The notes beneath the pieces are model-generated. The model was not told the origin of the DNA, made no database searches, and worked only from the letters and a program-made list of their open reading frames with translations. A stretch of 63,515 nucleotides of DNA, the filler included, from Octopus bimaculoides (taxonomy: Eukaryota): NCBI RefSeq assembly GCF_001194135.2. It is 8 parts of 8 records of this genome, joined end to end, with 100 filler letters (N's around TTAATTAATTAA, not from the genome) between each part and the next. Parts side by side here need not be neighbours in the genome. Positions count along the whole stretch, not along the records: positions 29,236 to 59,289 come from NC_069005.1; 7 more parts are not named here. One strand, written 5' to 3'. This document shows, one piece after another, positions 31,479 through 58,935 of this stretch. The number at the start of each line of letters is the position of its first letter. Position 1 is the stretch's first letter. The translations under genes were made by a program, and so were the position numbers.

Positions 31479-31551
<73 letters not shown>

Positions 31552-31775
31552 CATACATACACACATCCATATATCATATCTTTGTAGGTGGCTGCGTAAT
31601 GGTACACAATGGCATTTTTTATCGCTGTGTGATGTTGCAACCTATGTCTGGTCGTTTTATTAATTAAGAAATACACCTGATTCCATCGCTCTAACAATGC
31701 GACGAAGCGCTTTGTGACTAGCAGTTTGTAACAACATTCATTAGCGTAGCAGATATTGTGATACGGTGACATATA

Positions 31776-36971: not shown

Positions 36972-38758
36972 TACATAAATATACATAAGTATATACATAT
37001 ATGTCTGTTTATATGTGTGTATGTATATTTACATACATATATACAAATACAGACACACACACATGCATATACCAATATATAGTGTATATATATATATATA
37101 TGTATATACATATGTGTGTGAGTAAGTATGCGGTTTGTTTACAGCGAAACCTGAACAGCAATTAGCCTAATCAATTGAGTGTATATACGGGTGGCATAAT
37201 AACATGATACCTCATAATTGGTACCCCAGTGATAATGACGTAGATAAAGATGCTAGTAGGAAATGTAATATTCTTATTTCTGTCTGATAACACATAGAAT
37301 ATACAAAGATACGAATACAACACGCTCATATGCCACACGCATGTATAATCAATACTATTTACATTTATATATATATATATATTATGTATGTATGTATATA
37401 TATATATATATATATGTATATACTTTCTGATACATGTACATCTATATATATATGTGTGTGTGTGTATACACGTATGTGTACAAGCACATTCATACAGTAA
37501 TCACAGTGAGTGACATGTATACACATATTTTTAATGCGTTTACGTATAAGCATATTTATAAAGAAAAGAATATATTATATATTCATTTGATTTGCTATGT
37601 ATGGAAGCACATATAAGTTTAATGTGTACATTTATGTGTGCGTGTTTATGAGAGAGAGTGAGTAAGTGTATGTGTATGTGTGTCTTTGTAAATATATGTA
37701 TGTATGTTTGTGTATATAGATAAATCGATACATACATACATGCACACATACATACATGCACACATACATACATACATACATGCACACATGCATACATACA
37801 TACATGCATGCATACGTACATACATACATACATATATACATGCACACATGTATACATACATACATACATATATGCACACATACATACATACATACATACA
37901 TATGCATATCGCGGAGAATTTACACAATCCTTGCTGCAATGAATAGAATAGTTAGATTTATTTCTTTCGGATCTTTGTGTCCTGAGTTCGAATCCAGACT
38001 ATTTCACTTTTCGTTTTCATCGATTTCAGGTCGCGAAATGAACTCCCAGTCTCTGCGAAGTATTGGTGGAATATTAGAGGATTAAAAGAGACGTGTTGCC
38101 ACATCTATTACGTTCCGGGTTGCATGAGTTCTAATTCCAGCTTCATTTAGGGTCATTGTTAAGAGCTTTAGCAATTTTTTTTTTTTGTACGTCAGTTCCT
38201 CACAGCCTTTCCTAATACATACACACACATACACATGAATACATACACACACACTTGAAATATACTGCGTTTCTAACACTCTACGTCTTCAAAAAGACCT
38301 TTCCTGGATGAAATTACGCAGCCCGAAAGCGCTTAACCACACACATGCACTGAGTATGTGTTATCAATAATGTTTGCTTTATAGAACTGCTCCTAAGACA
38401 AAATTTGTATTTTATTTTACTTGTGCGACGCTTTTCCCCATCGGGTGATAGATTTTATGCTACCTGTATAGACCTCAGACCAGCGATTCGAATTCGTTTC
38501 GAGGATGAACCGTGTATACGGCATTAATAAGCAGACATAACCCCATAATATCCATATCTGTCGTTCTGGATCTCGTTCCGGTATGATTCATTTCGCTAGT
38601 GTTATAATTGAAAACTGTTGGTATCAGGTACATACATGCACATACATGCACATACATACACATACATACACATACATACTCACACATGCACAAACATACA
38701 TACATACATACATACACACATACATATATTCGTACATGCATTCATACACATATATTCA

Positions 38759-42875: not shown

Positions 42876-43329
42876 ATTAGATTAACTTTTATTTGTGAAA
42901 TACAGTTGTTCTGAATTTGCTGCAGAAAGTGGTCTGTGTTTGTGGCGGTGAGTGAGGGGCGCTAGGAACGTGGCCCGGGTATCAGAGAGGCGACAGCCTG
43001 AAAAAGTTTGAGAATAAAGTACTTTGACTGCAATATTTTTTCTCTCCATCATCTGGAGAGACAGATTTTGATAAATTACCATCTCATTTATACAGCTCAT
43101 GGGCAATTTTTTAATTTAGGGTAAGTTTTTAAAAGCTATGTGTTATCTTTGGTGTACTAAGTACATAAATTGAAAGCTGAGATGCAACTAGGTGATGGTA
43201 AAAAGAAAAAAGACCTAATTTACATAGATTATAATGCGGAGTACTACAATAATGGGATGCAAGTTTTACCTTATGCATCATTATCTTAAAGTTTTTAAAA
43301 AATGACTTACACATCGAAAGGTTAAGACT

Positions 43330-43533
43330 TTAACCTTTTAGCATTCTGACTACTTTGTCAAATGTAATGTTTGTCTATGTGAACATTGTTTTTAATTAAT
43401 CCTTAGCTTCAAGATTTCAATGCTGCGGTTGTATATTTTCAGAATGACATTGTAGGGTAGCTACGAGAGGCAGAATCTGGTCAAGAAAGATTATTTGGTT
43501 CGGATATGGCTGCTTTCAATGCAAAAGGGTTAA
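43330..43533. mobile_element. piggyBac-like MITE with TTAA target duplication
   Basis: TTAA-CCTTTTAGCATT at the left end and AATGCAAAAGGG-TTAA at the right end. Confidence 0.8.
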
Positions 43534-43580
43534 CATAGATGACTAGGCAGTCAGACAGGTAAACTGATACACAATTCACA

Positions 43581-43641
<61 letters not shown>

Positions 43642-44128
43642 GGCGGAGAGTCAGTATCTAGGCTATTTCTGTTTAGCATAGCAATTTATATCAATACAAG
43701 TACATCATAATGTATCTCTAAACGAGTGCTAGATCTTTAACAGAGGCTTCTTGTTGCTCTATGTCTCCCTCATAGCTGTTACAGTCCGCCAGTTACATAG
43801 AGCTCTCTCCTTAGAATTAAAGAAATTATAGTGTCTTGGTACTAATTTTAGCATTTTAACAGATGGAAGTTACAGTCAGCTTATTTATAACAAGCAGTGG
43901 ATTGAACATGAGCAATCCAATCCAAGATATATGTTTTTATATATATAAATGTATATTGTTGTGTATTGGAAGGGTCATTAGGCCAATAATAACACACGCA
44001 TTGGATCAATATCACTTCTCTATTGTTCGTCATTTGGTTAAATATCTAACCAACTAACTAATTGATCATTTGTTTAATGTGTTTATTAGTCAAATTTCTT
44101 TCGTCTCTGTTCGTAACCTTCTCTGTAA

Positions 44129-44180
<52 letters not shown>

Positions 44181-44239
44181 CGGTGTGCTCTTCAAAAACG
44201 AATGTGTGTGTCTGTGTGTGTCTGTGTGTGTGTTTGTTT

Positions 44240-44460
44240 GTGTGTCTGTTTCACCCACCCCCGCTATCGCTTGATAACCGAAGCTGGTGTGGTTACATCC
44301 CCGTAACTTAGCGGTTCGGCAAGAGAGAACGATATAATAAGTACTAGGGTTACAAAGAATAAGTCCTGGGATCGATTTGCTCGACCAAAGGCGGTGCTCC
44401 CGCATGGTCGCAGTCAAATGACTGAAACAAGTAGAAGAATAAAAGAATAAAAGAATACAT
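44240..44460 (+). mobile_element. SINE family A, 3' half
   Basis: Matches the family A tail. Confidence 0.85.
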
Positions 44461-45263
44461 GTATATTATGTTCGGCTTTATGTTCCAACACATTCCATCA
44501 GACATAAGTGAGATCACAAAATCAAGTCCATATTTGTACAACAATATTACATGTTAAAAGTCACGGCGTAGTCTACACCTAACAGTGTTAGAAGCTCTAC
44601 TGGAGCCAACGAAGGAACTTAGACCTGCTAGAAATAACAGCCAAATCTTCCTCAAATCACACTCTAATGCCTTTTGAAGAAATTTAAAAAAGGCAGGAGA
44701 CAGACAATCTTAGATATACACGACGGGATGGTCATAACTGGAATATCTTTGATTGTAGCTTGATTGTAGGTCCGCCGATATACAACAATGTTGACGTGGA
44801 GGTCAACAACAAGAAGCACAACAACAAATGCAATGTTAGTAACGTTGTTAGTAAAGAGGGGGGGGTCTTGTTAGGGGTTTGTTGGGGGTGTTAATGACTT
44901 CTATTATATAGGAGGGGACATAGAATTTAATCGGTTTATCCCCTGGTCTTGAGCCTACCTATGACCAGAGGCATTCCAGTTCATCCCACGCTTCTCTTCC
45001 CAGACTGCATCATCGAATTTGTCTCTTTTTTCTTTTCTTTTTCTTTTTAGACGATAGGGTGTATTTTGATAAAGATTTGGCTGCTATTTCTAGCTGGTCA
45101 AGTGACCACATAAAGGTCCCTTCGTCGGCTCGCCTTACAACTTGGTACAACTATAGGTGCTACTGAACCGTGATACACGATGATGTTATTACTAGTATGA
45201 TGGTGTTACAACTAGTATGACTGACAACCATGAAAATATTGTTTGTACTAACGAGATACCAAC

Positions 45264-45269
45264 TTTATT
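45264..45269 (-). promoter_or_regulatory. Candidate polyadenylation signal of the minus-strand gene
   Basis: AATAAA on the minus strand about 830 nt downstream of the stop codon, followed by a GT-rich stretch. Confidence 0.35.
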
Positions 45270-46098
45270 TTGTGAACTTTCATGTCTTCAAATTCATTTC
45301 TTAGAATAGATTGTTCTTCGTGGTCTTCGACTAACGGATCCTCTTCCATTTTCAAAGAATATTTTTAGTACTTCCTACTAACCGACATTTTGTCTTCGTT
45401 GGGCTTTATAATCGTGCACCTTAATCTATATTTCCAATGAAATGTAGTTATAAATATCAACATCAGTTTTTTTTTTTTTAAATCGATTGGAAATGTTTTG
45501 TACTCTTCCATTTTTCTGTCGCCTTCGATCTTCGATCTCTTAAGATTTTAGTATTAGTATTACAAACGTTATCCTTAACCTCTCCATTGTTCTTCAAACC
45601 GTTGTTTTCCCCCTCTCCTTCTTACATCTGATATATAATTTATCTCTGTATTATACCTTTATACGGTTATCAATGTTTTTCATATCGTTTCTTTTCATTT
45701 TTTTTTTTTTTGTCTTACTTCGTTGTACTGATGTATTTATCTCTAATATAGCTATTTTTAGTTTTCCTTTTTCATTGGCATTCGTTCAAACATATATTCG
45801 TGTCTCTTGTTCTTTCAGTCCAAATTATATTTACTCTAAAGCATTATTTTTTTTTTTTTCCAATGCATATTTCTCTAATGCTTTCTTGTTTAAAAATCCA
45901 TAAATGTTGGGGCATTTGTAGTGTTAAGACCTTAATGTTGTGAATGTGTATGTGTGCGTGTTTGTGTATGTGTATGCGTGTATGCATGTGTGTGTATGTG
46001 AAGAAGTGTAGTTTTTACAAGTTGTGTGAGCCACGATTTGCTGTCGTGTATTGTAGCTACTGCTGTTTTGGAATACAATTCATAAATAATGTTTTATA

Positions 46099-47297
46099 CT
46101 ACACCTCCTCTTCTAGATCTATCTCTTCAAAGTCTCTGAAATCGTCAGGCCATGGAACAGAAGATACACCTGTAAGAAAGTTGTTCAATTCTCTCACATC
46201 GTATTTTCTTTCCTTCTCCGAACTTCCTTTACGACTGCTCGGAACACTGTCTGGCTCTTGCGATCCACGTTGCTCCAGAGAAGAATATTTTTCCTCAGTT
46301 GAATTATTGATCCTCTCAATGTCAGTGATTGGGCTGCCTTTACCTGAATCATACGAGGCTTTAGAACAGGAACAAATGTCTGGACAGGGCGATACAGAAA
46401 TTAATTCTACATTTCCATGACCAACATTTTTTACACTTGGACCCAAAATGTGTTTTAAATTTCGCAAAGAAAGACATTCTCCTTCCTCTTGGTCAGATGC
46501 TTGTTCTACAGTATGATAGGATTCACTTTTCGTGCTATCCGTGCCTGAATCAACATAGCTACCTAGGTCTGAATCATACGACAACTTTGAACCGTGCATT
46601 GGTTCTGCCGTATAAAAGGAATCAGAATCGGAGGCAATTTCGTCATCAAGTTCTTGAATAACCTTTTGATCATGGAAATCGTATAATGATTGGAAGCTAA
46701 CAGCTTTTGCTTTTGAGTCAGAAGCGCTTCTAACTTTTGTGTCATGAACAATCTTTGGTTCACAGATATCATCTTTGAGGCGGAAGGAAACACTTTTGGC
46801 TCTAACAATAGGAGTGAAATCTTCATTTGAATCGAGAATAACCTTTGGTTCAATGATGTCGTCCTCGGAACGGAAGTAAACATTTTTAGATTTTAAGTCG
46901 GGAGACATTGTTGCGATTAAATTAGTAGCAGAGTTTGATCTGTGTAAGGATTCTTGCGATGGAGTTGAATCAGATTTTGCGTTTAAATCAGCGTCGGGGC
47001 TGACATTCGAACTTTGAACAACTTGTTGAGAGACGTGTATTTTACGTGGTAAGAAATCGGTTTGCGTACTTGAGTCCACAGTGGGCATTTGACCGAGGCA
47101 AGGAATAATTTCTTCTACAGACGCATCATTTCTTGAGATGCAACAGCAAAAGAAAAAATTCATGAAACAATGACCGATCCTCGAGAAAAGGTTGATCAGA
47201 TAATCTCCCAAGTTGAGATTTTCGTCCGGAGGCTTTTCGAGCATTTTCAAAAGATAATCCAAGCACGGACGAAATATCAATAATACAATCAGTAAAA
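46099..47297 (-). CDS. Terminal coding exon of an uncharacterised membrane protein with a long acidic, Ser-rich tail
   Basis: An open, non-repetitive frame of about 398 codons. Acceptor TTCTACTTAATCAG at 47298 (phase 1) lies just after an in-frame stop. The exon begins with hydrophobic LLIVLLIFRPC. An alternative start is ATG at 47244. Confidence 0.85.
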
Positions 47298-47783
47298 CTG
47301 ATTAAGTAGAAGTAGCATGGATTAATTCATTTACAAAGGTTATCAAATGAACTGTTTCGAAATCTGAAATTTATGAATATAAAATATCAACCAGAATTCG
47401 CTTAGGAACGTCAATTCGAAATGTGAATGAATTGAAGTTTGAGGTTATTTCTCAAGCCAGACCCATCGCTACGTCATGTTCCACTTGTTGATTATGACGT
47501 AGTACGCACTGAAATTTTTAACACCTCCTTTGTCGCATCAAGGATACAGATTTACACAGAGACAAAACACTTCATCTCACGTTGCTCTGCGGTCACTTCG
47601 ACACCTGAGGCGTACCTGTTCGGGTACGTCGTCGGTTGGATGGAGGGAGAGTGAGCTAATGTGCAGCACAAACATTTGATCACAATAACCAAATCCTTTG
47701 TGCAGGTCGTTCGGCAAAAGCTGAAAGGAAATACATCGCCTTCGACGGGAGAGGCTATCATCATCCTCATCATCATTATTATT

Positions 47784-47821
<38 letters not shown>

Positions 47822-47826
47822 TCGAA

Positions 47827-48019
47827 GGCGGGGGAGCTGGCAGAATAGTTAGCACGCTGGGCAAAATGCTTACCGGTATTTCGCCCGTCGCTCCGATCAG
47901 AGTTCAAATTCCGCCGAGGTCGACTTTGCTTTCCATCGTTTCGGGGTCGTTAAATTAAGTAGCAGTGAAACACTGGGGTCGATGTAATCGACTCATCACC
48001 TCTGAAAATTTGTGGAAAA

Positions 48020-48020
<1 letters not shown>
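47827..48020 (+). mobile_element. SINE family B copy (intronic)
   Basis: Matches the consensus; flanked by (ATC)n and (TTA)n. Confidence 0.88.
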
Positions 48021-48061
<41 letters not shown>

Positions 48062-48349
48062 TATTTTTGTTTTGTATATGTACAAGTTGACTCCAAGTCT
48101 CACCCAGAGACCTCAAGAGACATCAAGTTAGAAGTTCATGTTGGTGTTATGCGTAGGCTGTCATATATTTGGTTTTTCACAGAGTATTGTTCTAGAGAAT
48201 GTTTAAGAAAACATAAGAAAATTATAAGTTAGTCTTTAAATTTGAGATTACGTAACAGCATTTTACGTAGAATATGAGCAGTTCCCATGAGCATTATCTT
48301 TTGAATTTCTGCTATTTTGAGGTTTCCTGCGTTAAAAGCTTTTTGTCGA

Positions 48350-48650
48350 AGAAATCCACCCGAGGACTTATCCTTTGAAAGCCTAGTACTTATTCTATCG
48401 GCCTTTTTCGACGAACCGCTAATTTACGGGGACGTAAACACACCAGTATCGGCTGTGATGCGATGGCGGGAGACGAGCTTCTTTCAGCTTTCGTCTACTA
48501 AATCCACAAACAAGGTTTTGATTTGCCTGGATTTGTCTAACAAGGCTTTGATTTAATATAATAGAAAACACGTGTCCAAGGTGTTAGTTGCTGAAACTGA
48601 ACCCGGTACCGTGAGGTTGGAAAGGGAACTTTCCACCATACAGCCACGCA
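48350..48650 (-). mobile_element. SINE family A, degenerate (intronic)
   Basis: Family A motifs on the minus strand. Confidence 0.75.
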
Positions 48651-48840
48651 TGCGTCATGACATTTACATCTATATATTTACATAGGAGTATGTTTTTCTG
48701 TTCTGTGAAACGAACCCTGGTCTACTACGAACTATGAAAGCGCAACGTACTTCTTGGTGCCTCGCTTAATGTTCGCACGAAATCGAAAGTGATGTCTACT
48801 TACTTCAGACAGATTCAAATTACATAGATAGATGGATGGG

Positions 48841-48905
<65 letters not shown>

Positions 48906-48944
48906 TAACGGATTAGTGATGAGGATTTTGAGCTCATGATATGG

Positions 48945-48976
<32 letters not shown>

Positions 48977-49046
48977 ATANNNNNNNNNNNNNNNNNNNNN
49001 NNNNNNNNNNNNNNNNNNNNNNNNNNNNNNNNNNNNNNNNNNNNNN

Positions 49047-49080
<34 letters not shown>

Positions 49081-49290
49081 GTGTGCATGTGTGTGTGTGT
49101 CTATGTATTTATGTATGTATGCATGTATATATATATATAAAGATATAGATATATATGGATGTATATGTGTGCATATATGTATGTATATATTTATGTATGT
49201 ACACACAAGCAGACATATGTGTGTTTACAAATACCATATATAGATTTACGTTTATATTCATATACACACAGATGTCTGTTTATCTCTGTG

Positions 49291-49337
<47 letters not shown>

Positions 49338-49428
49338 ATGTGTATGTGTGTAAGTATATAAGCATATATGAGTGTCTATATATAAGTATATGCATATGCA
49401 TATATATATATGTGTGTGTATGTGTGTG

Positions 49429-49460
<32 letters not shown>

Positions 49461-49478
49461 CGTGTGTTTGTATGCATG

Positions 49479-49509
<31 letters not shown>

Positions 49510-49720
49510 GTCTGTATGCATTTATGTATGTATGTATGTATGTATGTATGTATGTATGTATGGAGGTATGTATGGAGGTATGGAAGTATGTATGTATGCG
49601 AACACAAGCACACGCTTGCATGCGCTCGTACAATAGATTTTCCTTAGTAAAATGGCTTATGCTGTTGCTGCTATCAAATCGTCTGTCAGCTTAGGAGCGT
49701 ACCTACTTGGAGGTACTTAC

Positions 49721-49811
49721 CAAATGACTTTGGCACAGGAATAATATCTTCAATTTCTTTGGAAAGTTGTAAACCAGACATAAGAAAAAAAGTTCCTCCA
49801 ATAACTAACGT
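49721..49811 (-). CDS. Internal coding exon of the minus-strand membrane-protein gene
   Basis: Acceptor GGTTCTTCAG at 49812 and donor GTAAGT at 49720. The 91 nt encode TLVIGGTFFLMSGLQLSKEIEDIIPVPKSF plus 1 nt, which joins the terminal exon in frame (...PKSF-V-LLIVLLIF...). Confidence 0.75.
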
Positions 49812-50081
49812 CTGAAGAACCACACACACACGCACTCACACACACAAATGCATACACATATATGCACGCACATATACATACATACACTACACATATTCAC
49901 AAAGAGTTATATGCAAACATGTACGCATGTATGTGAGTGTACATACTTTATAAGTGTGAATTTACATGTGTGGATATATGTACAAATATATATATATATA
50001 TATATATATACCCCTACACACACGAATACATGCATATGTGATATATATATATATACACACACACAATATATATATCATATA

Positions 50082-50112
<31 letters not shown>

Positions 50113-50123
50113 AGGTGTTTATT

Positions 50124-50176
<53 letters not shown>

Positions 50177-50256
50177 ATATTTATGCACACATACACATAA
50201 CATATTCGCGTGTTAGGTATATTTATATGTACGTGTATGGACAGATATATTATTTT

Positions 50257-50434
50257 CTACTCTAGGCACAGCGCCCGAAATTTAGATCCACCCCAATACG
50301 CAACTGGTACTTAATTTATCGATCCTGAAAGGACGAAAGGCAAATTCGACCTCGACGGAATTTGAACGCAAACGCAAAAGAAATACCGCTAAGCATTTAG
50401 CCCGGCGTGCTAACGTTTCTGCCAGCTCGCCGCC
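50257..50434 (-). mobile_element. SINE family B copy
   Basis: Matches the consensus. Confidence 0.85.
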
Positions 50435-50533
50435 ATGTCTGCACAGATATATTATACTATATGTACGTAGACACATATACATACGCATTCATTAAACTTC
50501 TATTTATCTACCCTACACATATTGAGTTAGTTT

Positions 50534-50566
<33 letters not shown>

Positions 50567-50859
50567 CATACATACACACACCATTGTAGGAGAATTTTAT
50601 ATTTTCATTTATTTATTTATTTATATTAATGTGTGATTATTTTGGCTTTTGTTTGTTTTATGATTTCGTTATTTGTCTTCTTTCTTGGCACTCTTTTCTT
50701 CTTTTTTTTTTTGTTTGTTTTGTTTGGCATCGTCTCTACATTACATGACTCTATTTTTTACCTTTTTACTCTTGTTGTTTATATTGTCAGATCTTACTCT
50801 TAAGTCTACTCTGTGAGGCTACGTGTGTAGGATGTATATGCATATGAATATATATATAT

Positions 50860-57579: not shown

Positions 57580-57789
57580 GGTTTCAAATTTTGCCACAAG
57601 GTCAGCAATTTGGTGGAAGGAGCTAAGTCGATTACGTCGACCCCAGTGTATGACTGGTACTTATTTTATTGACCCCGAAAAGATGAACTCAGAACATAAA
57701 AGACTGATGAAATACCTCTAAGCATTTCGCCCGGCGTGCTAACGATTCTGCCAGCTCTTCTCCTTAAATATTATAATAATAACAATAAC

Positions 57790-57849
<60 letters not shown>

Positions 57850-58062
57850 CCTTTCCACTATAGGCGCAAGGCCTGAAATTTGGGGGTGAAGGGACTACGT
57901 CTATTGCATTAACCCCAGTGCGTAACTGGTACTTAATTTATCGACCCCGAAAGGATGAAAGGCAAAGTCGACCCCGGCGGAATTGGAACTCAGAGCGTGA
58001 AACAAACGAAATACCGTTAAGCATTTCGTCCGGCGTGCTAACGATTATGCCAGCTCGCTGCC
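57580..58062 (-). mobile_element. Two tandem SINE family B copies (57580-57764, 57849-58062) separated by (AAT)n
   Basis: Both match the consensus. Confidence 0.88.
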
Positions 58063-58441
58063 TGAAGAAGAAGAAGAAGAAGAAGAAGAAGAAGAAGAAG
58101 AAGAAGAAGAAGAAGAAGAAGAAGAAGAAGAAGAAGAAGAAGAAGAAGAAGAAGAAGAAGATATTTTTAAAATGATAATGATAATTGTAATAGGACAAGT
58201 TATCAAGATAATCAAATTTATTTACATATTTTTGTATTTCCAATTAACAAGTATTAATCGAGGTTATAAATTATGATTAAGCGATATGTATGTGTGTAGC
58301 TACCTGTGAATGCACGGGTGTATTAGCTACTGTGTCTCTCTGTCTCGCTTCACGCTAACTGTGTGTCCATTTTAAGTTGTATCACACAAGGGTGTATTAT
58401 ATTATTATATATAATATATAATATAATTGTAGAATGTGGAA

Positions 58442-58935
58442 TTACACTTTTGCACCGTTCTGGCGACAACCATCCAACCTCCACAACGGCTCTGTTTTGG
58501 GTAATCGTTGCTGATGAGGGTTTATGAGGTCGGAGTGCAGCTCCTGATTCAACCTCTTTTTATAGTTGTCTTTTGCACGACATACAGAGTAAACTTTGGG
58601 ATTATTCTTTGACATGCCGGTCCTTACACAGCACTGAAGCACTAGGAAACTAAATGTTTTGCTCAAAAGAACATGCTGATCCCAGAACAAGCTGATCCCA
58701 AGGTTTTCTGCAATTTTACGCTGACTATATCCACCTTCAGAATGACCCGCAATGTGGCCTCTTTGGAATTCAGACAGTTCCAAGGCTACTTTTGTACATG
58801 GCATGATTAAACAGTCGCATATAGAATCTGAAACATAAAAGTGTCAATTAATAAGAAATATAAACATTTACAAGTTAGAATAAACAGAAAACGATGTTTT
58901 ATGGGGTGTCTATTTACTTCTAACATATGTGTGTA
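58442..58935 (-). mobile_element. Internally deleted Tc1-like transposon
   Basis: ORF start MPCTKVALELSEFQRGHIAGHSEGGYSQRKIAENLGI is a Tc1 N-terminal HTH pattern. No DDE core is present. One terminus-like end lies near 58900-58935. Confidence 0.65.

What the first reader, a model, noticed from the sequence alone, without database searches (positions are those of the whole stretch)
46099..49811. Unrecognised membrane protein with a ~380-aa disordered tail densely packed with docking motifs
Seen: the ORF track starts this protein at a TTG, but an upstream 91-nt exon splices in frame. This gives hydrophobic segment - loop (LQLSKEIEDIIPVPK) - hydrophobic segment, then a long acidic Ser-rich tail. 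I recognise no family. The tail has motif matches for palmitoylation, LC8, PP1 (three), beta-TrCP (two) and an adaptor ear (separate findings). Inference: a membrane-anchored, phospho-regulated signalling or trafficking scaffold, possibly restricted to molluscs or cephalopods. This is the best candidate for an undescribed system in the window. Short motifs do occur by chance in disordered sequence.
Basis: partly seen in the sequence, partly recalled or inferred. Interest (0 to 1): 0.72.

Follow-up and report, generated by a model that had tools for sequence, protein, structure and literature searches.

The report
Octopus-only disordered protein, not transmembrane

Summary
The window is Octopus bimaculoides chromosome CM046625.1 (identical). 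The ORF is real. It is LOC106874399 (XP_014777610.1 / A0A0L8GVR9, 391 aa, "uncharacterized"), on the minus strand, with CDS 47244..46105 + 42997..42962. The gap at 48980-49046 lies in a microsatellite 1.7 kb upstream of the ATG and touches no reading frame.

O. vulgaris, O. sinensis and a third octopod all have an in-frame stop 33 nt upstream of the ATG. A paralog has one 51 nt upstream. The "exon" itself carries 5- and 6-nt poly-T indels. So the two hydrophobic segments are not part of the protein.

The protein has no Pfam or PDB match. AlphaFold gives mean pLDDT 34, with one helix (residues 12-36) that ends in an invariant CCC. A profile scan of 1.84 billion proteins found only octopod orthologues and one short paralog family.

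Conserved motifs:
- CCC
- TQT (LC8-type)
- KSV[ST]F (PP1 RVxF-type)
- DSGT[DE]S
- C-terminal VPWPDDFRDFEEIDL

Not conserved: two of the three PP1 motifs and one of the two degrons. No canonical adaptor-ear motif is present.

Best reading: a lipid-anchored, disordered docking scaffold. This is inferred, not shown. Interest is modest.

The parts
46105..47244 (-). Main coding exon of LOC106874399 (codons 1-380: MLEKPPDENL ... EEIDLEEE), ending at the donor GAG|GT (GT = 46104-46103).
   Evidence: The ORF is. The span 47244..42962 is 4283 nt, which equals the annotated gene span of XP_014777610.1. The same start is used in the O. sinensis RefSeq model. All indels against relatives are multiples of 3, and dN/dS is 0.47-0.76 with constrained islands.
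42962..42997 (-). Coding part of the small terminal exon (AVASLIPGPRS + TAG), after the acceptor tttttcag|GCT.
   Evidence: The peptide was found in the minus-strand translation. It matches the C-termini of P0004 and P0005. The acceptor AG is CG in O. vulgaris, so use of this exon is not universal.
46099..46104 (-). GTG TAG: one extra Val plus a stop if the last intron is retained.
   Evidence: Sequence. The window's own ORF is P0001.
47245..47297 (-). It is 5' leader, not coding.
   Evidence: O. vulgaris and O. sinensis have a +1 nt insertion and an in-frame TAA 33 nt upstream of the ATG. The Logan octopod has a net -3 change and an in-frame TAG 33 nt upstream. The paralog has a TAG 51 nt upstream. 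This is the least conserved 60-nt block in the neighbourhood.
47298..47560 (-). Conserved non-coding block directly upstream: candidate promoter / 5' UTR. It holds three CRE-like TGACGT hexamers (47408-13, 47471-76, 47495-500).
   Evidence: It is 90-98% identical to O. vulgaris and 82-93% to the Logan octopod, where the neutral expectation is about 69%. Conservation stops abruptly at about 47550. The core is kept upstream of the paralog gene. Three of only 8 TGACGT hexamers in the piece cluster here. Promoter function is inferred.
49721..49811 (-).
   Evidence: Its poly-T run differs by +6 nt in O. vulgaris and +5 nt in O. sinensis, and the latter shifts the frame. It has 6 substitutions in 91 nt, against 4-5 in the next 110 nt of supposed intron. 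No protein in 5.8 billion matches its translation.
48980..49046 (.). Assembly gap inside a (TA)n/(CATA)n microsatellite. It is non-coding and lies upstream of the gene.
   Evidence: The same gap is in GCA_001194135.2.
47137..47211 (-). Residues 12-36, LGDYLINLFSRIGHCFMNFFFCCCI: the only predicted helix, ending in the invariant CCC (47140-47148). Proposed S-acylated membrane-association module.
   Evidence: AlphaFold predicts a helix at 12-36 with pLDDT 50-58. C33, C34 and C35 are invariant in orthologues and paralogs. The best 19-mer has Kyte-Doolittle 1.34, and 0.71-1.15 in the paralogs. The Hessa-scale sum is +5.1. Acylation is inferred.
47059..47067 (-). T60-Q61-T62 in VDSSTQTDFLP: an LC8-type TQT anchor with Asp at position -4.
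   Evidence: It is conserved in all paralog-A orthologues and in the Logan paralog B (ESCTQT), but is AQT in O. bimaculoides paralog B. Motif rules are taken from PMC6607443.
46783..46797 (-). K150-S-V-S-F154: an RVxF-type PP1 docking motif. It is the only one of the three that is conserved.
   Evidence: The orthologues have KSVSF / KTVSF / KSVTF, and V152 and F154 are invariant across paralogs in alignment A3. KNVYF (120) is lost in the Logan species. KAVSF (180) occurs only in O. bimaculoides.
46534..46551 (-). D232-S-G-T-D-S237: a DSGxxS phosphodegron-type motif inside the constrained island 201-292.
   Evidence: It is conserved as DSGT[DE]S in all orthologues and as DSGVETLS in paralog B. 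The island has dN/dS of about 0.25. The second DSGKGS (299) is unique to O. bimaculoides.
46108..46173 (-). Residues 358-379, TGVSxVPWPDDFRDFEEIDLxE: the most constrained segment of the protein. Its binding partner is unknown.
   Evidence: Twenty of 22 residues are invariant in four sequences. dN/dS is 0.13-0.14 at dS of about 0.3. It matches none of the canonical ear or clathrin regexes that I tested.

Best explanation
Shown:
- The locus is Octopus bimaculoides LOC106874399, a two-coding-exon gene on the minus strand (47244..46105 + 42997..42962; 391 aa, or 381 aa if the last intron is retained).
- Translation starts at the ATG at 47244.
- The protein belongs to a small, fast-evolving gene family detected only in octopods: this gene plus a shorter paralog, A0A0L8H8A8.
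- It is intrinsically disordered apart from one N-terminal helix.
- Purifying selection is concentrated in short islands: residues 1-70, 201-292 and the last ~20 residues.

Inferred mechanism, with rough probabilities:
- The hydrophobic helix (residues 12-36) with its invariant Cys33-35 triplet is S-acylated and holds the protein on the cytosolic face of a membrane (about 0.45).
- The disordered chain then acts as a docking scaffold.
- The conserved VDSSTQTD strand binds the LC8 dimer and so pairs two chains (about 0.3).
- The conserved KSV[ST]F recruits the PP1 catalytic subunit (about 0.3).
- The Ser/Asp-rich island SDSDSFYTAEPMH..SYDSDLGS..DSGT[DE]S is a multi-phosphorylation and degron module that controls turnover (about 0.25).
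- The invariant acidic-aromatic C-terminus VPWPDDFRDFEEIDL docks a further, unidentified partner.
- A conserved block with three CRE-like TGACGT sites directly upstream is the likely promoter.

The overall confidence of 0.55 blends the shown part (about 0.9) with the inferred mechanism.
For: Gene model:
- The window is identical to CM046625.1.
- The gene span of XP_014777610.1 / A0A0L8GVR9 is exactly 47244..42962.
- The terminal exon was found at 42997.
- O. sinensis XP_036354421.1 has the same start and the same type of end.

Start codon:
- In-frame stops lie between the proposed acceptor and the ATG in three orthologues from independent assemblies and in the paralog.
- The paralogs P0006 and P0007 also begin with Met 13-15 residues before the hydrophobic/CCC patch.
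- CDS indels are all multiples of 3, whereas the leader has +1 and -4/+1 indels.

No transmembrane segment.

Disorder.

Orphan status.

Constraint islands.

Motif conservation and chance expectation:
- RVxF: 3 observed against 0.4 expected.
- DSGxxS: 2 observed against 0.07 expected.
- CCC: 1 observed against 0.01 expected.
- All.
- LC8 motif rules (TQT anchor, Asp at -4, disordered context) come from PMC6607443.

Promoter.
Against: - No transcript data were available, so the transcription start site, the 5' UTR structure and the use of the terminal exon rest on existing annotations and on conservation.
- No binding, acylation or localisation evidence exists. The motifs are short.
- PMC6607443 stresses that many TQT peptides do not bind LC8. 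Here position -3 is Ser rather than a large basic residue.
- O. bimaculoides paralog B has AQT instead of TQT. The paralogs lack the basic residue of RVxF (TETVSF, NSVAF).
- Two of three RVxF motifs and one of two DSGxxS motifs are not conserved.
- The AlphaFold alignment has only 6 sequences, so low pLDDT is weak evidence of disorder on its own.
- Absence from squids, cuttlefish and other molluscs depends on what the protein collections hold and on the limits of HMMER with disordered sequences.
Confidence: 0.55

Rival explanations
1. One or more upstream exons, including 49721..49811, splice into 47297 and give a multi-pass or hairpin membrane protein (hydrophobic - loop - hydrophobic) with a cytoplasmic tail.
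For: In O. bimaculoides the junction is in frame, with a perfect GTAAGT donor and an AG acceptor. The ~230-nt block that holds the segment is well conserved with O. vulgaris and O. sinensis.
Against: - In-frame stops lie between the acceptor and the ATG in all three orthologues and in the paralog.
- A 5-nt indel sits inside the 'exon' in O. sinensis.
- Conservation is no higher in the 'exon' than in its flank.
- 1383 alternative in-frame AG..GT segments exist upstream.
- Two annotation pipelines start the protein at 47244.
- The hydrophobic cores are only about 10-13 residues long.
Confidence: 0.04
2. A single-pass type III membrane protein. Residues ~15-36 (YLINLFSRIGHCFMNFFFCCCI) act as an uncleaved signal-anchor. 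The acidic 14-residue N-terminus faces outside or the lumen, and the CCC acts as juxtamembrane palmitoylation sites, as in synaptotagmin.
For: AlphaFold draws a 25-residue helix. The charge distribution (acidic N-flank, Arg38 after the helix) fits an N-out orientation. Cys clusters at the cytosolic end of transmembrane helices are a known arrangement (own knowledge).
Against: - The best 19-mer has Kyte-Doolittle 1.34, below the usual ~1.6.
- The Hessa-scale sum is about +5 kcal/mol, with Arg, His and two Asn inside.
- The homologous segment of the paralogs is far less hydrophobic (0.71-1.15) and contains Lys and Asp.
Confidence: 0.12
3. A soluble cytosolic or nuclear disordered protein with no membrane association. 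The Cys-rich helix serves another role (metal binding, a redox-sensitive or oligomerisation helix). The short motifs are either phosphorylation-dependent sites for other partners or chance matches.
For: No lipidation evidence exists. Several further conserved Cys residues are present (C26, C49, C287, C291, C293). The motifs are short and partly not conserved.
Against: An invariant CCC immediately after a run of aromatic and hydrophobic residues, kept in both paralog groups, is the typical context of S-acylation (own knowledge). The TQT, KSVSF and DSG motifs lie in conserved positions.
Confidence: 0.25
4. Not a functional protein: a young, drifting ORF on a transcribed locus.
For: Overall dN/dS is high (0.76 against O. 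vulgaris). The linkers 71-200 and 293-362 have dN/dS of about 1 or higher. There are no homologues outside octopods.
Against: - The ORF of ~375-391 codons is intact in four species at dS up to 0.4.
- All indels are in frame.
- The islands have dN/dS of 0.13-0.3.
- A paralog shares the ordered set of islands.
Confidence: 0.04

Closest known systems
PP1-interacting proteins (RVxF-type regulatory subunits, e.g. the PPP1R3 glycogen-targeting subunits with RVSF/KVSF)
   Same: It is a largely disordered protein carrying a conserved [KR]-x-V-x-F motif. KSVSF / KTVSF / KSVTF also fit the stricter [HKR][ACHKMNQRSTV]V[CHKNQRST][FW] form, which I recall from my own knowledge. The motif lies in an acidic, phosphorylatable context.
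   Different: It has no sequence homology to any PPP1R family and no targeting domain. Only one of three motif copies is conserved. Binding is untested.
LC8 (DYNLL) client proteins with a TQT anchor, e.g. BIM/BCL2L11 (DKSTQT) (PMC6607443)
   Same: VDSSTQTD has the TQT anchor, Asp at -4, a small residue at -2, no pre-anchor proline within the 8-mer, and a disordered context. It is conserved across orthologues.
   Different: There is a single site. Ser rather than a basic residue is at -3. O. bimaculoides paralog B has AQT. The paper shows that many TQT peptides fail to bind.
N-terminally S-acylated disordered neuronal proteins (GAP-43/neuromodulin, SCG10/stathmin-2, paralemmin) - own knowledge
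   Same: A Cys cluster next to hydrophobic or basic residues near the N-terminus is followed by a long acidic disordered chain. It would work as a peripheral membrane anchor.
   Different: The Cys triplet is at residues 33-35, at the end of a 25-residue helix, not at residues 3-4. There is no homology, no IQ domain and no stathmin domain.
beta-TrCP substrates with a DSGxxS phosphodegron (IkappaB-alpha, beta-catenin) - own knowledge
   Same: DSGTDS / DSGTES matches the regex exactly. It is conserved and embedded in a Ser/Asp-rich stretch suited to priming kinases.
   Different: It is a regex match only. The second copy is not conserved. No ubiquitination or stability data exist.

Membership tests
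   The best 19-mer has Kyte-Doolittle 1.34 (0.71-1.15 in the paralogs). The Hessa-scale sum is +5.1. A dedicated predictor (DeepTMHMM) was not available.
   In-frame stops or a frameshift lie upstream of the ATG in O. vulgaris, O. sinensis, the Logan octopod and the paralog. The 91-nt segment carries a 5-nt indel.
PP1-interacting protein (RVxF class) | [RK]-x(0,1)-[VI]-{P}-[FW] motif in a disordered region, conserved in orthologues | tested here: met
   K150-S-V-S-F is conserved as KSVSF / KTVSF / KSVTF. The two other copies are not conserved. The paralogs lack the basic residue.
PP1-interacting protein (RVxF class) | Direct binding to the PP1 catalytic subunit | not testable with these tools
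   This needs pull-down or ITC with the wild-type peptide and a V152A/F154A mutant.
LC8/DYNLL client | 8-residue motif with a TQT anchor in a disordered segment, a favourable -4 residue and no pre-anchor Pro | tested here: met
   VDSSTQTD is conserved. The segment is disordered in the model. The criteria come from PMC6607443. LC8Pred itself was not run.
LC8/DYNLL client | Measured binding to the LC8 dimer | not testable with these tools
   PMC6607443 reports many non-binding TQT peptides.
beta-TrCP phosphodegron substrate | DSGxxS motif, conserved | tested here: met
   DSGT[DE]S at 232-237 is found in all orthologues. DSGKGS at 299 is found only in O. bimaculoides.
Clathrin-adaptor ear / clathrin-box ligands | FxDxF, DP[FW], WxxF, [DE]nF..[FL]...R or L[ILMFV].[ILMFV][DE] | tested here: not met
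   No matches in any orthologue. DDFRDFEEIDL only resembles acidic-aromatic ear motifs.
Any curated protein family (Pfam-A) or solved structure | A significant profile match | tested here: not met
   Pfam gave no hits at E<=10 or E<=1. The PDB profile search gave a best E of 0.64.

The most novel reading that the evidence does not exclude
An octopod-specific gene family (LOC106874399 plus the A0A0L8H8A8-type paralog) encodes palmitoyl-anchored disordered scaffolds that bring PP1 and LC8 to a membrane. The genes are transcribed from a conserved CRE-containing promoter. On this reading the family is a lineage-specific, cAMP/Ca2+-responsive signalling adaptor, possibly tied to neuronal or sensory specialisations of octopuses.
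Probability: 0.15. Interest if true: 0.55.

Novelty: new member of a known kind. Interest (0 to 1): 0.3.

Why it matters
As reported, an undescribed membrane protein, it does not hold, and that should be recorded so the upstream exon is not propagated. What remains is an uncharacterised, lineage-restricted gene family in octopuses. Both its protein islands and its upstream regulatory block are conserved between paralogs. Cephalopod-specific genes are candidates for cephalopod-specific biology. This one offers directly testable short motifs (S-acylation, LC8, PP1, degron) and a compact putative CRE promoter. The case also shows that an in-frame AG..GT segment in AT-rich, repeat-rich DNA is no evidence for an exon: 1383 such segments lie in the 12 kb upstream.

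Tried and rejected
- **Pfam:** nothing on the spliced 429-aa model, the 391-aa RefSeq form or the paralog.
- **PDB:** the sequence-profile search gave only a chance hit, E 0.64.
- **Protein searches:** two word-indexed searches of 5.8 billion proteins and one full HMMER profile scan of 1.84 billion representatives found only octopod sequences.
- **Structure search:** skipped, because the AlphaFold model is too poor to give meaningful matches (pLDDT 34).
- **Exact look-up of the 381-aa form:** not on record. The 391-aa form was found instead.
- **Literature:** no papers for the gene or protein accessions or for the SRA run. The species behind SRR11869391 therefore stays unidentified, and I call it an octopod only from ~80% nucleotide identity.
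- **Rfam and tRNA scans of the piece:** only sub-threshold microsatellite-type miRNA matches and no tRNA, so the conserved 49.6-49.8 kb block is not a known RNA.
- **Terminal exon in O. vulgaris:** a regex search failed because the peptide differs (AIASLVPGPRS) and the acceptor is CG. It was found by BLAST instead.
- **MAFFT alignment A3:** it misplaces the paralogs' TQT. I judged TQT conservation from the sequences themselves.
- **Rejected readings:**
  - A C-terminal PDZ ligand (EEV). That end exists only in the intron-retained form, and the annotated proteins end in PGPRS.
  - A cleaved signal peptide, because of the acidic 14-residue N-region and the polar residues in the hydrophobic stretch.
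Full report
**1. Where the sequence comes from, and the gap**

The piece is identical to Octopus bimaculoides assembly GCA_001194135.2, chromosome CM046625.1, positions 5086887-5111169. There are no mismatches and the N runs are the same.

The gap at 48980-49046 lies between (TA)n and (CATA)n microsatellite arrays on the upstream side of the gene. Its two flanks align to adjoining positions of the gap-free O. vulgaris chromosome:
- window 50009..49049 = L002 4936..5887
- window 48976..48821 = L002 5858..6011

The flanks are therefore collinear, and the missing DNA is microsatellite. The gap is 1.7 kb upstream of the start codon supported below, so no supported reading frame crosses it.

**2.

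The minus-strand ORF 46099..47280 (393 codons from a TTG) is there. The segment 49721..49811 is bounded by ttcag| and |gtaagt. Joined to cag|47297 it reads in frame as TLVIGGTFFLMSGLQLSKEIEDIIPVPKSF/VLLIVLLIFRPCLDYLLKMLEKPPDE.... The arithmetic is correct.

It is not informative, though. In the 12 kb upstream, 1383 AG..GT segments of at least 30 nt are open in the same joining frame.

**3. The upstream exon is not coding**

Four independent lines agree.

(a) Existing annotations.
- The original genome annotation (UniProt A0A0L8GVR9) and NCBI RefSeq (XP_014777610.1, "uncharacterized protein LOC106874399") give one and the same 391-aa protein starting MLEKPPDENL.
- Its gene span of 4283 nt equals 47244..42962 exactly.
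- The O. sinensis RefSeq protein XP_036354421.1 starts at the same Met.

(b) The 53 nt between the proposed acceptor and the ATG are open only in O. bimaculoides.
- O. vulgaris and O. sinensis, from independent assemblies, share a 1-nt insertion and an in-frame TAA 33 nt upstream of the ATG.
- A more distant octopod (Logan assembly of SRR11869391) has a -4/+1 change and an in-frame TAG 33 nt upstream.
- The paralog locus has a TAG 51 nt upstream.
- By contrast, every indel inside the CDS is a multiple of three.

(c) The 91-nt segment itself behaves as non-coding.
- It contains a poly-T run that is 6 nt longer in O. vulgaris and 5 nt longer in O. sinensis. The 5-nt change shifts the frame.
- It has 6 substitutions in 91 nt, against 4-5 in the next ~110 nt of supposed intron.

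(d) The paralogous proteins also begin with Met only 13-15 residues before the homologous hydrophobic/CCC patch.

The hydrophobic - loop - hydrophobic N-terminus therefore does not belong to the protein. Even taken at face value, its hydrophobic cores are only about 10-13 residues long.

**4. The supported gene model (minus strand)**

- The ATG is at 47244, in the context aaaATGc.
- The main exon runs to 46105, with the donor GAG|GT.
- The intron spans 46104..42998.
- The terminal exon starts at 42997 after tttttcag and encodes AVASLIPGPRS plus TAG, ending at 42962.
- If the intron is retained, the frame ends one codon later, giving ...EEV and the TAG at 46099-46101.
- In O. vulgaris the acceptor AG of the terminal exon is CG, so the last 11 residues are probably dispensable.
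- This is the only convincing gene in the 30-kb piece. All other long ORFs are microsatellite or N-run artefacts.

**5. The region just upstream looks like the promoter / 5' leader**

Block 47298..47560 is 90-98% identical to O. vulgaris and 82-93% identical to the Logan octopod. That is as good as the best coding parts. The synonymous divergence to the Logan species (dS 0.40) predicts only about 69% identity at neutral sites.

Conservation stops abruptly at about 47550. O. vulgaris carries about 2.3 kb of extra DNA at exactly that point.

The core of the block is retained upstream of the paralog gene, although the two proteins are only about 30% identical. That core includes ACGTCACAAT and ATTTCGA(A/G)TTGACG(T/C)T..AAAGCGA(A/T)TTCT.

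Three of the eight TGACGT hexamers in the whole piece lie within 93 nt here. A CRE-type promoter is an inference, since no transcript ends were available.

**6. The protein**

- No family is recognised. Pfam gives nothing. The PDB gives nothing.
- AlphaFold, with a 6-sequence alignment, gives mean pLDDT 34. The only helices are residues 12-36 (pLDDT 50-58) and a weak one at 261-267.
- Composition: 15% Ser, 18% Asp+Glu, pI 4.6.
- No segment reaches transmembrane hydrophobicity. The best 19-mer, LFSRIGHCFMNFFFCCCIS, has Kyte-Doolittle 1.34 and a summed Hessa-scale value of about +5. I entered the scale values from memory. The homologous paralog segments score 0.71-1.15 and contain Lys and Asp.

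**7. Distribution**

Two word-indexed searches of 5.8 billion proteins and a full HMMER profile scan of 1.84 billion representatives returned only:
- orthologues from O. bimaculoides, O. vulgaris, O. sinensis and the SRR11869391 octopod;
- one shorter paralog family, made up of O. bimaculoides A0A0L8H8A8 and 179-180-aa proteins from SRR11869391.

Nothing from decapodiform cephalopods or other molluscs was detected. The caveat is that disordered proteins diverge quickly.

**8. Selection**

| Region (aligned codons) | dN/dS |
|---|---|
| Whole CDS | 0.47-0.76 |
| Residues 1-70 | 0.2-0.3 |
| Linker 71-200 | about 1 |
| Residues 201-292 | about 0.25 |
| Linker 293-362 | 0.5-2.2 |
| Last 21 codons | 0.13-0.14 against the Logan octopod; no differences between O. 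bimaculoides and O. vulgaris |

This is the pattern of a disordered protein whose function sits in short islands.

**9.

| Motif | Position | Conservation |
|---|---|---|
| CCC | 33-35 | Invariant in orthologues and both paralogs |
| S-x-EEIIPCL | 42-50 | Invariant in orthologues and both paralogs |
| TQT in VDSSTQTDFLP | 60-62 | All orthologues and the Logan paralog; AQT in O. bimaculoides paralog B |
| KSVSF | 150-154 | Conserved as KSVSF / KTVSF / KSVTF |
| DSGT[DE]S | 232-237 | Conserved; sits within SDSDSFYTAEPMH.SKLSYDSDLGS |
| ILGP.VK.VGHG.V.LISV.PCPDIC | about 266-291 | Conserved in orthologues |
| TGVS.VPWPDDFRDFEEIDL | 358-377 | Conserved in orthologues |
| KNVYF | 120 | Lost in the Logan species |
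| KAVSF | 180 | O. bimaculoides only |
| DSGKGS | 299 | O. bimaculoides only |

- The TQT has Asp/Glu at -4, small residues at -3 and -2, and no proline within the 8-mer. This fits the rules in PMC6607443. The same paper warns that many TQT peptides do not bind LC8.
- No FxDxF, DP[FW], WxxF, beta2-ear or clathrin-box pattern is present. The "adaptor ear" reading is only a resemblance of DDFRDF to acidic-aromatic motifs. The same stretch also fits a generic LIR pattern (D-F-E-E-I), which I recall from memory.
- The three K-x-V-x-F...DDI-x-EPK units (117-210) are an internal triplication. The paralogs carry one unit.

**10. How it most likely works**

Shown: the gene model, the absence of a transmembrane segment, the restricted distribution, and the island pattern of constraint. 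The disorder rests on a shallow AlphaFold model.

Inferred:
- The aromatic-rich helix with its invariant Cys triplet is a peripheral membrane anchor by S-acylation.
- LC8 binds the TQT strand and pairs two chains.
- PP1c docks at KSV[ST]F.
- The Ser/Asp-rich island with DSGT[DE]S is a phosphorylation-controlled stability switch.
- The invariant C-terminus binds a further partner.

I put the gene-model part at about 0.9. The lipid anchor is about 0.45. Each docking claim is about 0.3.

Rivals:
- a type III single-pass anchor using residues 15-36 (0.12);
- a soluble disordered protein (0.25);
- a non-functional ORF (0.04).

**11. Comparison with known systems**

It would work like an RVxF-type PP1 regulatory subunit, like an LC8 client, and like N-terminally acylated disordered proteins such as GAP-43. 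It is homologous to none of them. Membership in any curated family was tested and not met.

The gene itself is already in RefSeq and UniProt as uncharacterised. What is new here is the family definition (two paralog groups with an ordered set of islands), the conserved upstream block, and the correction of the N-terminus claim.

**12. Verdict**

The ORF and its disordered, motif-bearing tail are real and uncharacterised. The "unrecognised membrane protein" built on a spliced upstream exon is not. Interest is modest (0.3). It is an octopod-restricted family with testable motifs, but there is no functional evidence and no surprising mechanism.

Noticed in passing
window 47298-47560 (-); TGACGT at 47408-47413, 47471-47476, 47495-47500: A conserved non-coding block lies directly upstream of the ATG. 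It holds three of the piece's eight TGACGT (CRE-like) hexamers. Its core is kept even upstream of the ~30%-identical paralog gene (L003), which suggests a shared CRE-type promoter.
   Followed up: partly
window 42962-42997 (-) and donor at 46104/46105; L002 ~17790: The annotated C-terminus (AVASLIPGPRS) comes from a tiny terminal exon 3.1 kb downstream. Its acceptor AG is CG in O. vulgaris, so the two C-termini (EEV against PGPRS) may differ between species or isoforms.
   Followed up: partly
That is at the top of the range for intergenic blocks here (75-92%). It is not coding, but it could be a conserved non-coding element or a non-coding 5' exon.
   Followed up: partly
window ~47563; L002 7199-9523: O. 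vulgaris carries about 2.3 kb of extra DNA exactly at the upstream edge of the conserved promoter-like block. This is probably a transposon insertion. Its content was not examined.
   Followed up: no
window 47818-47993, 50282-50575, 57624-57767, 57889-58066: Several copies of one ~180-350-nt interspersed repeat (SINE-like) all match L002 1381-1739. No tRNA head was detected by ARAGORN.
   Followed up: no
window 58442-58804 (-): A 120-codon ORF has a weak helix-turn-helix match (Pfam HTH_23, E 0.0045, below the curated cut-off). It may be a relic of a DNA-transposon transposase.
   Followed up: partly
window 29236-59289, e.g. 31507-31577, 37701-37901, 49065-49502, 50016-50199: About 100 sub-threshold Rfam matches to mir-297 / mir-466 / mir-3149-type families all fall on (TG)n/(TA)n microsatellites. 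They are low-complexity artefacts, and none reaches a gathering score.
   Followed up: yes
L002 9845-10972 (O. vulgaris OX597838.1): The deposited O. vulgaris protein CAI9740536.1 starts at the internal Met53, although the genomic ORF is intact from the MLEKPPDENL ATG (375 codons). The annotation is N-terminally truncated and omits the CCC module.
   Followed up: yes
L001 1838-1840 (SRR11869391 contig) vs protein P0002: The Logan protein P0002 reads through the normal stop (...DEEVQYQTLF...), whereas the fetched contig has TAG there ('translates to query: no'). This is either a stop-codon polymorphism or an assembly variant among the four contigs.
   Followed up: no
window 47577-47864 (-): A (GAT)n/(ATG)n trinucleotide microsatellite gives poly-Asp / poly-Met pseudo-ORFs just upstream of the conserved block. 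It is not coding.
   Followed up: no
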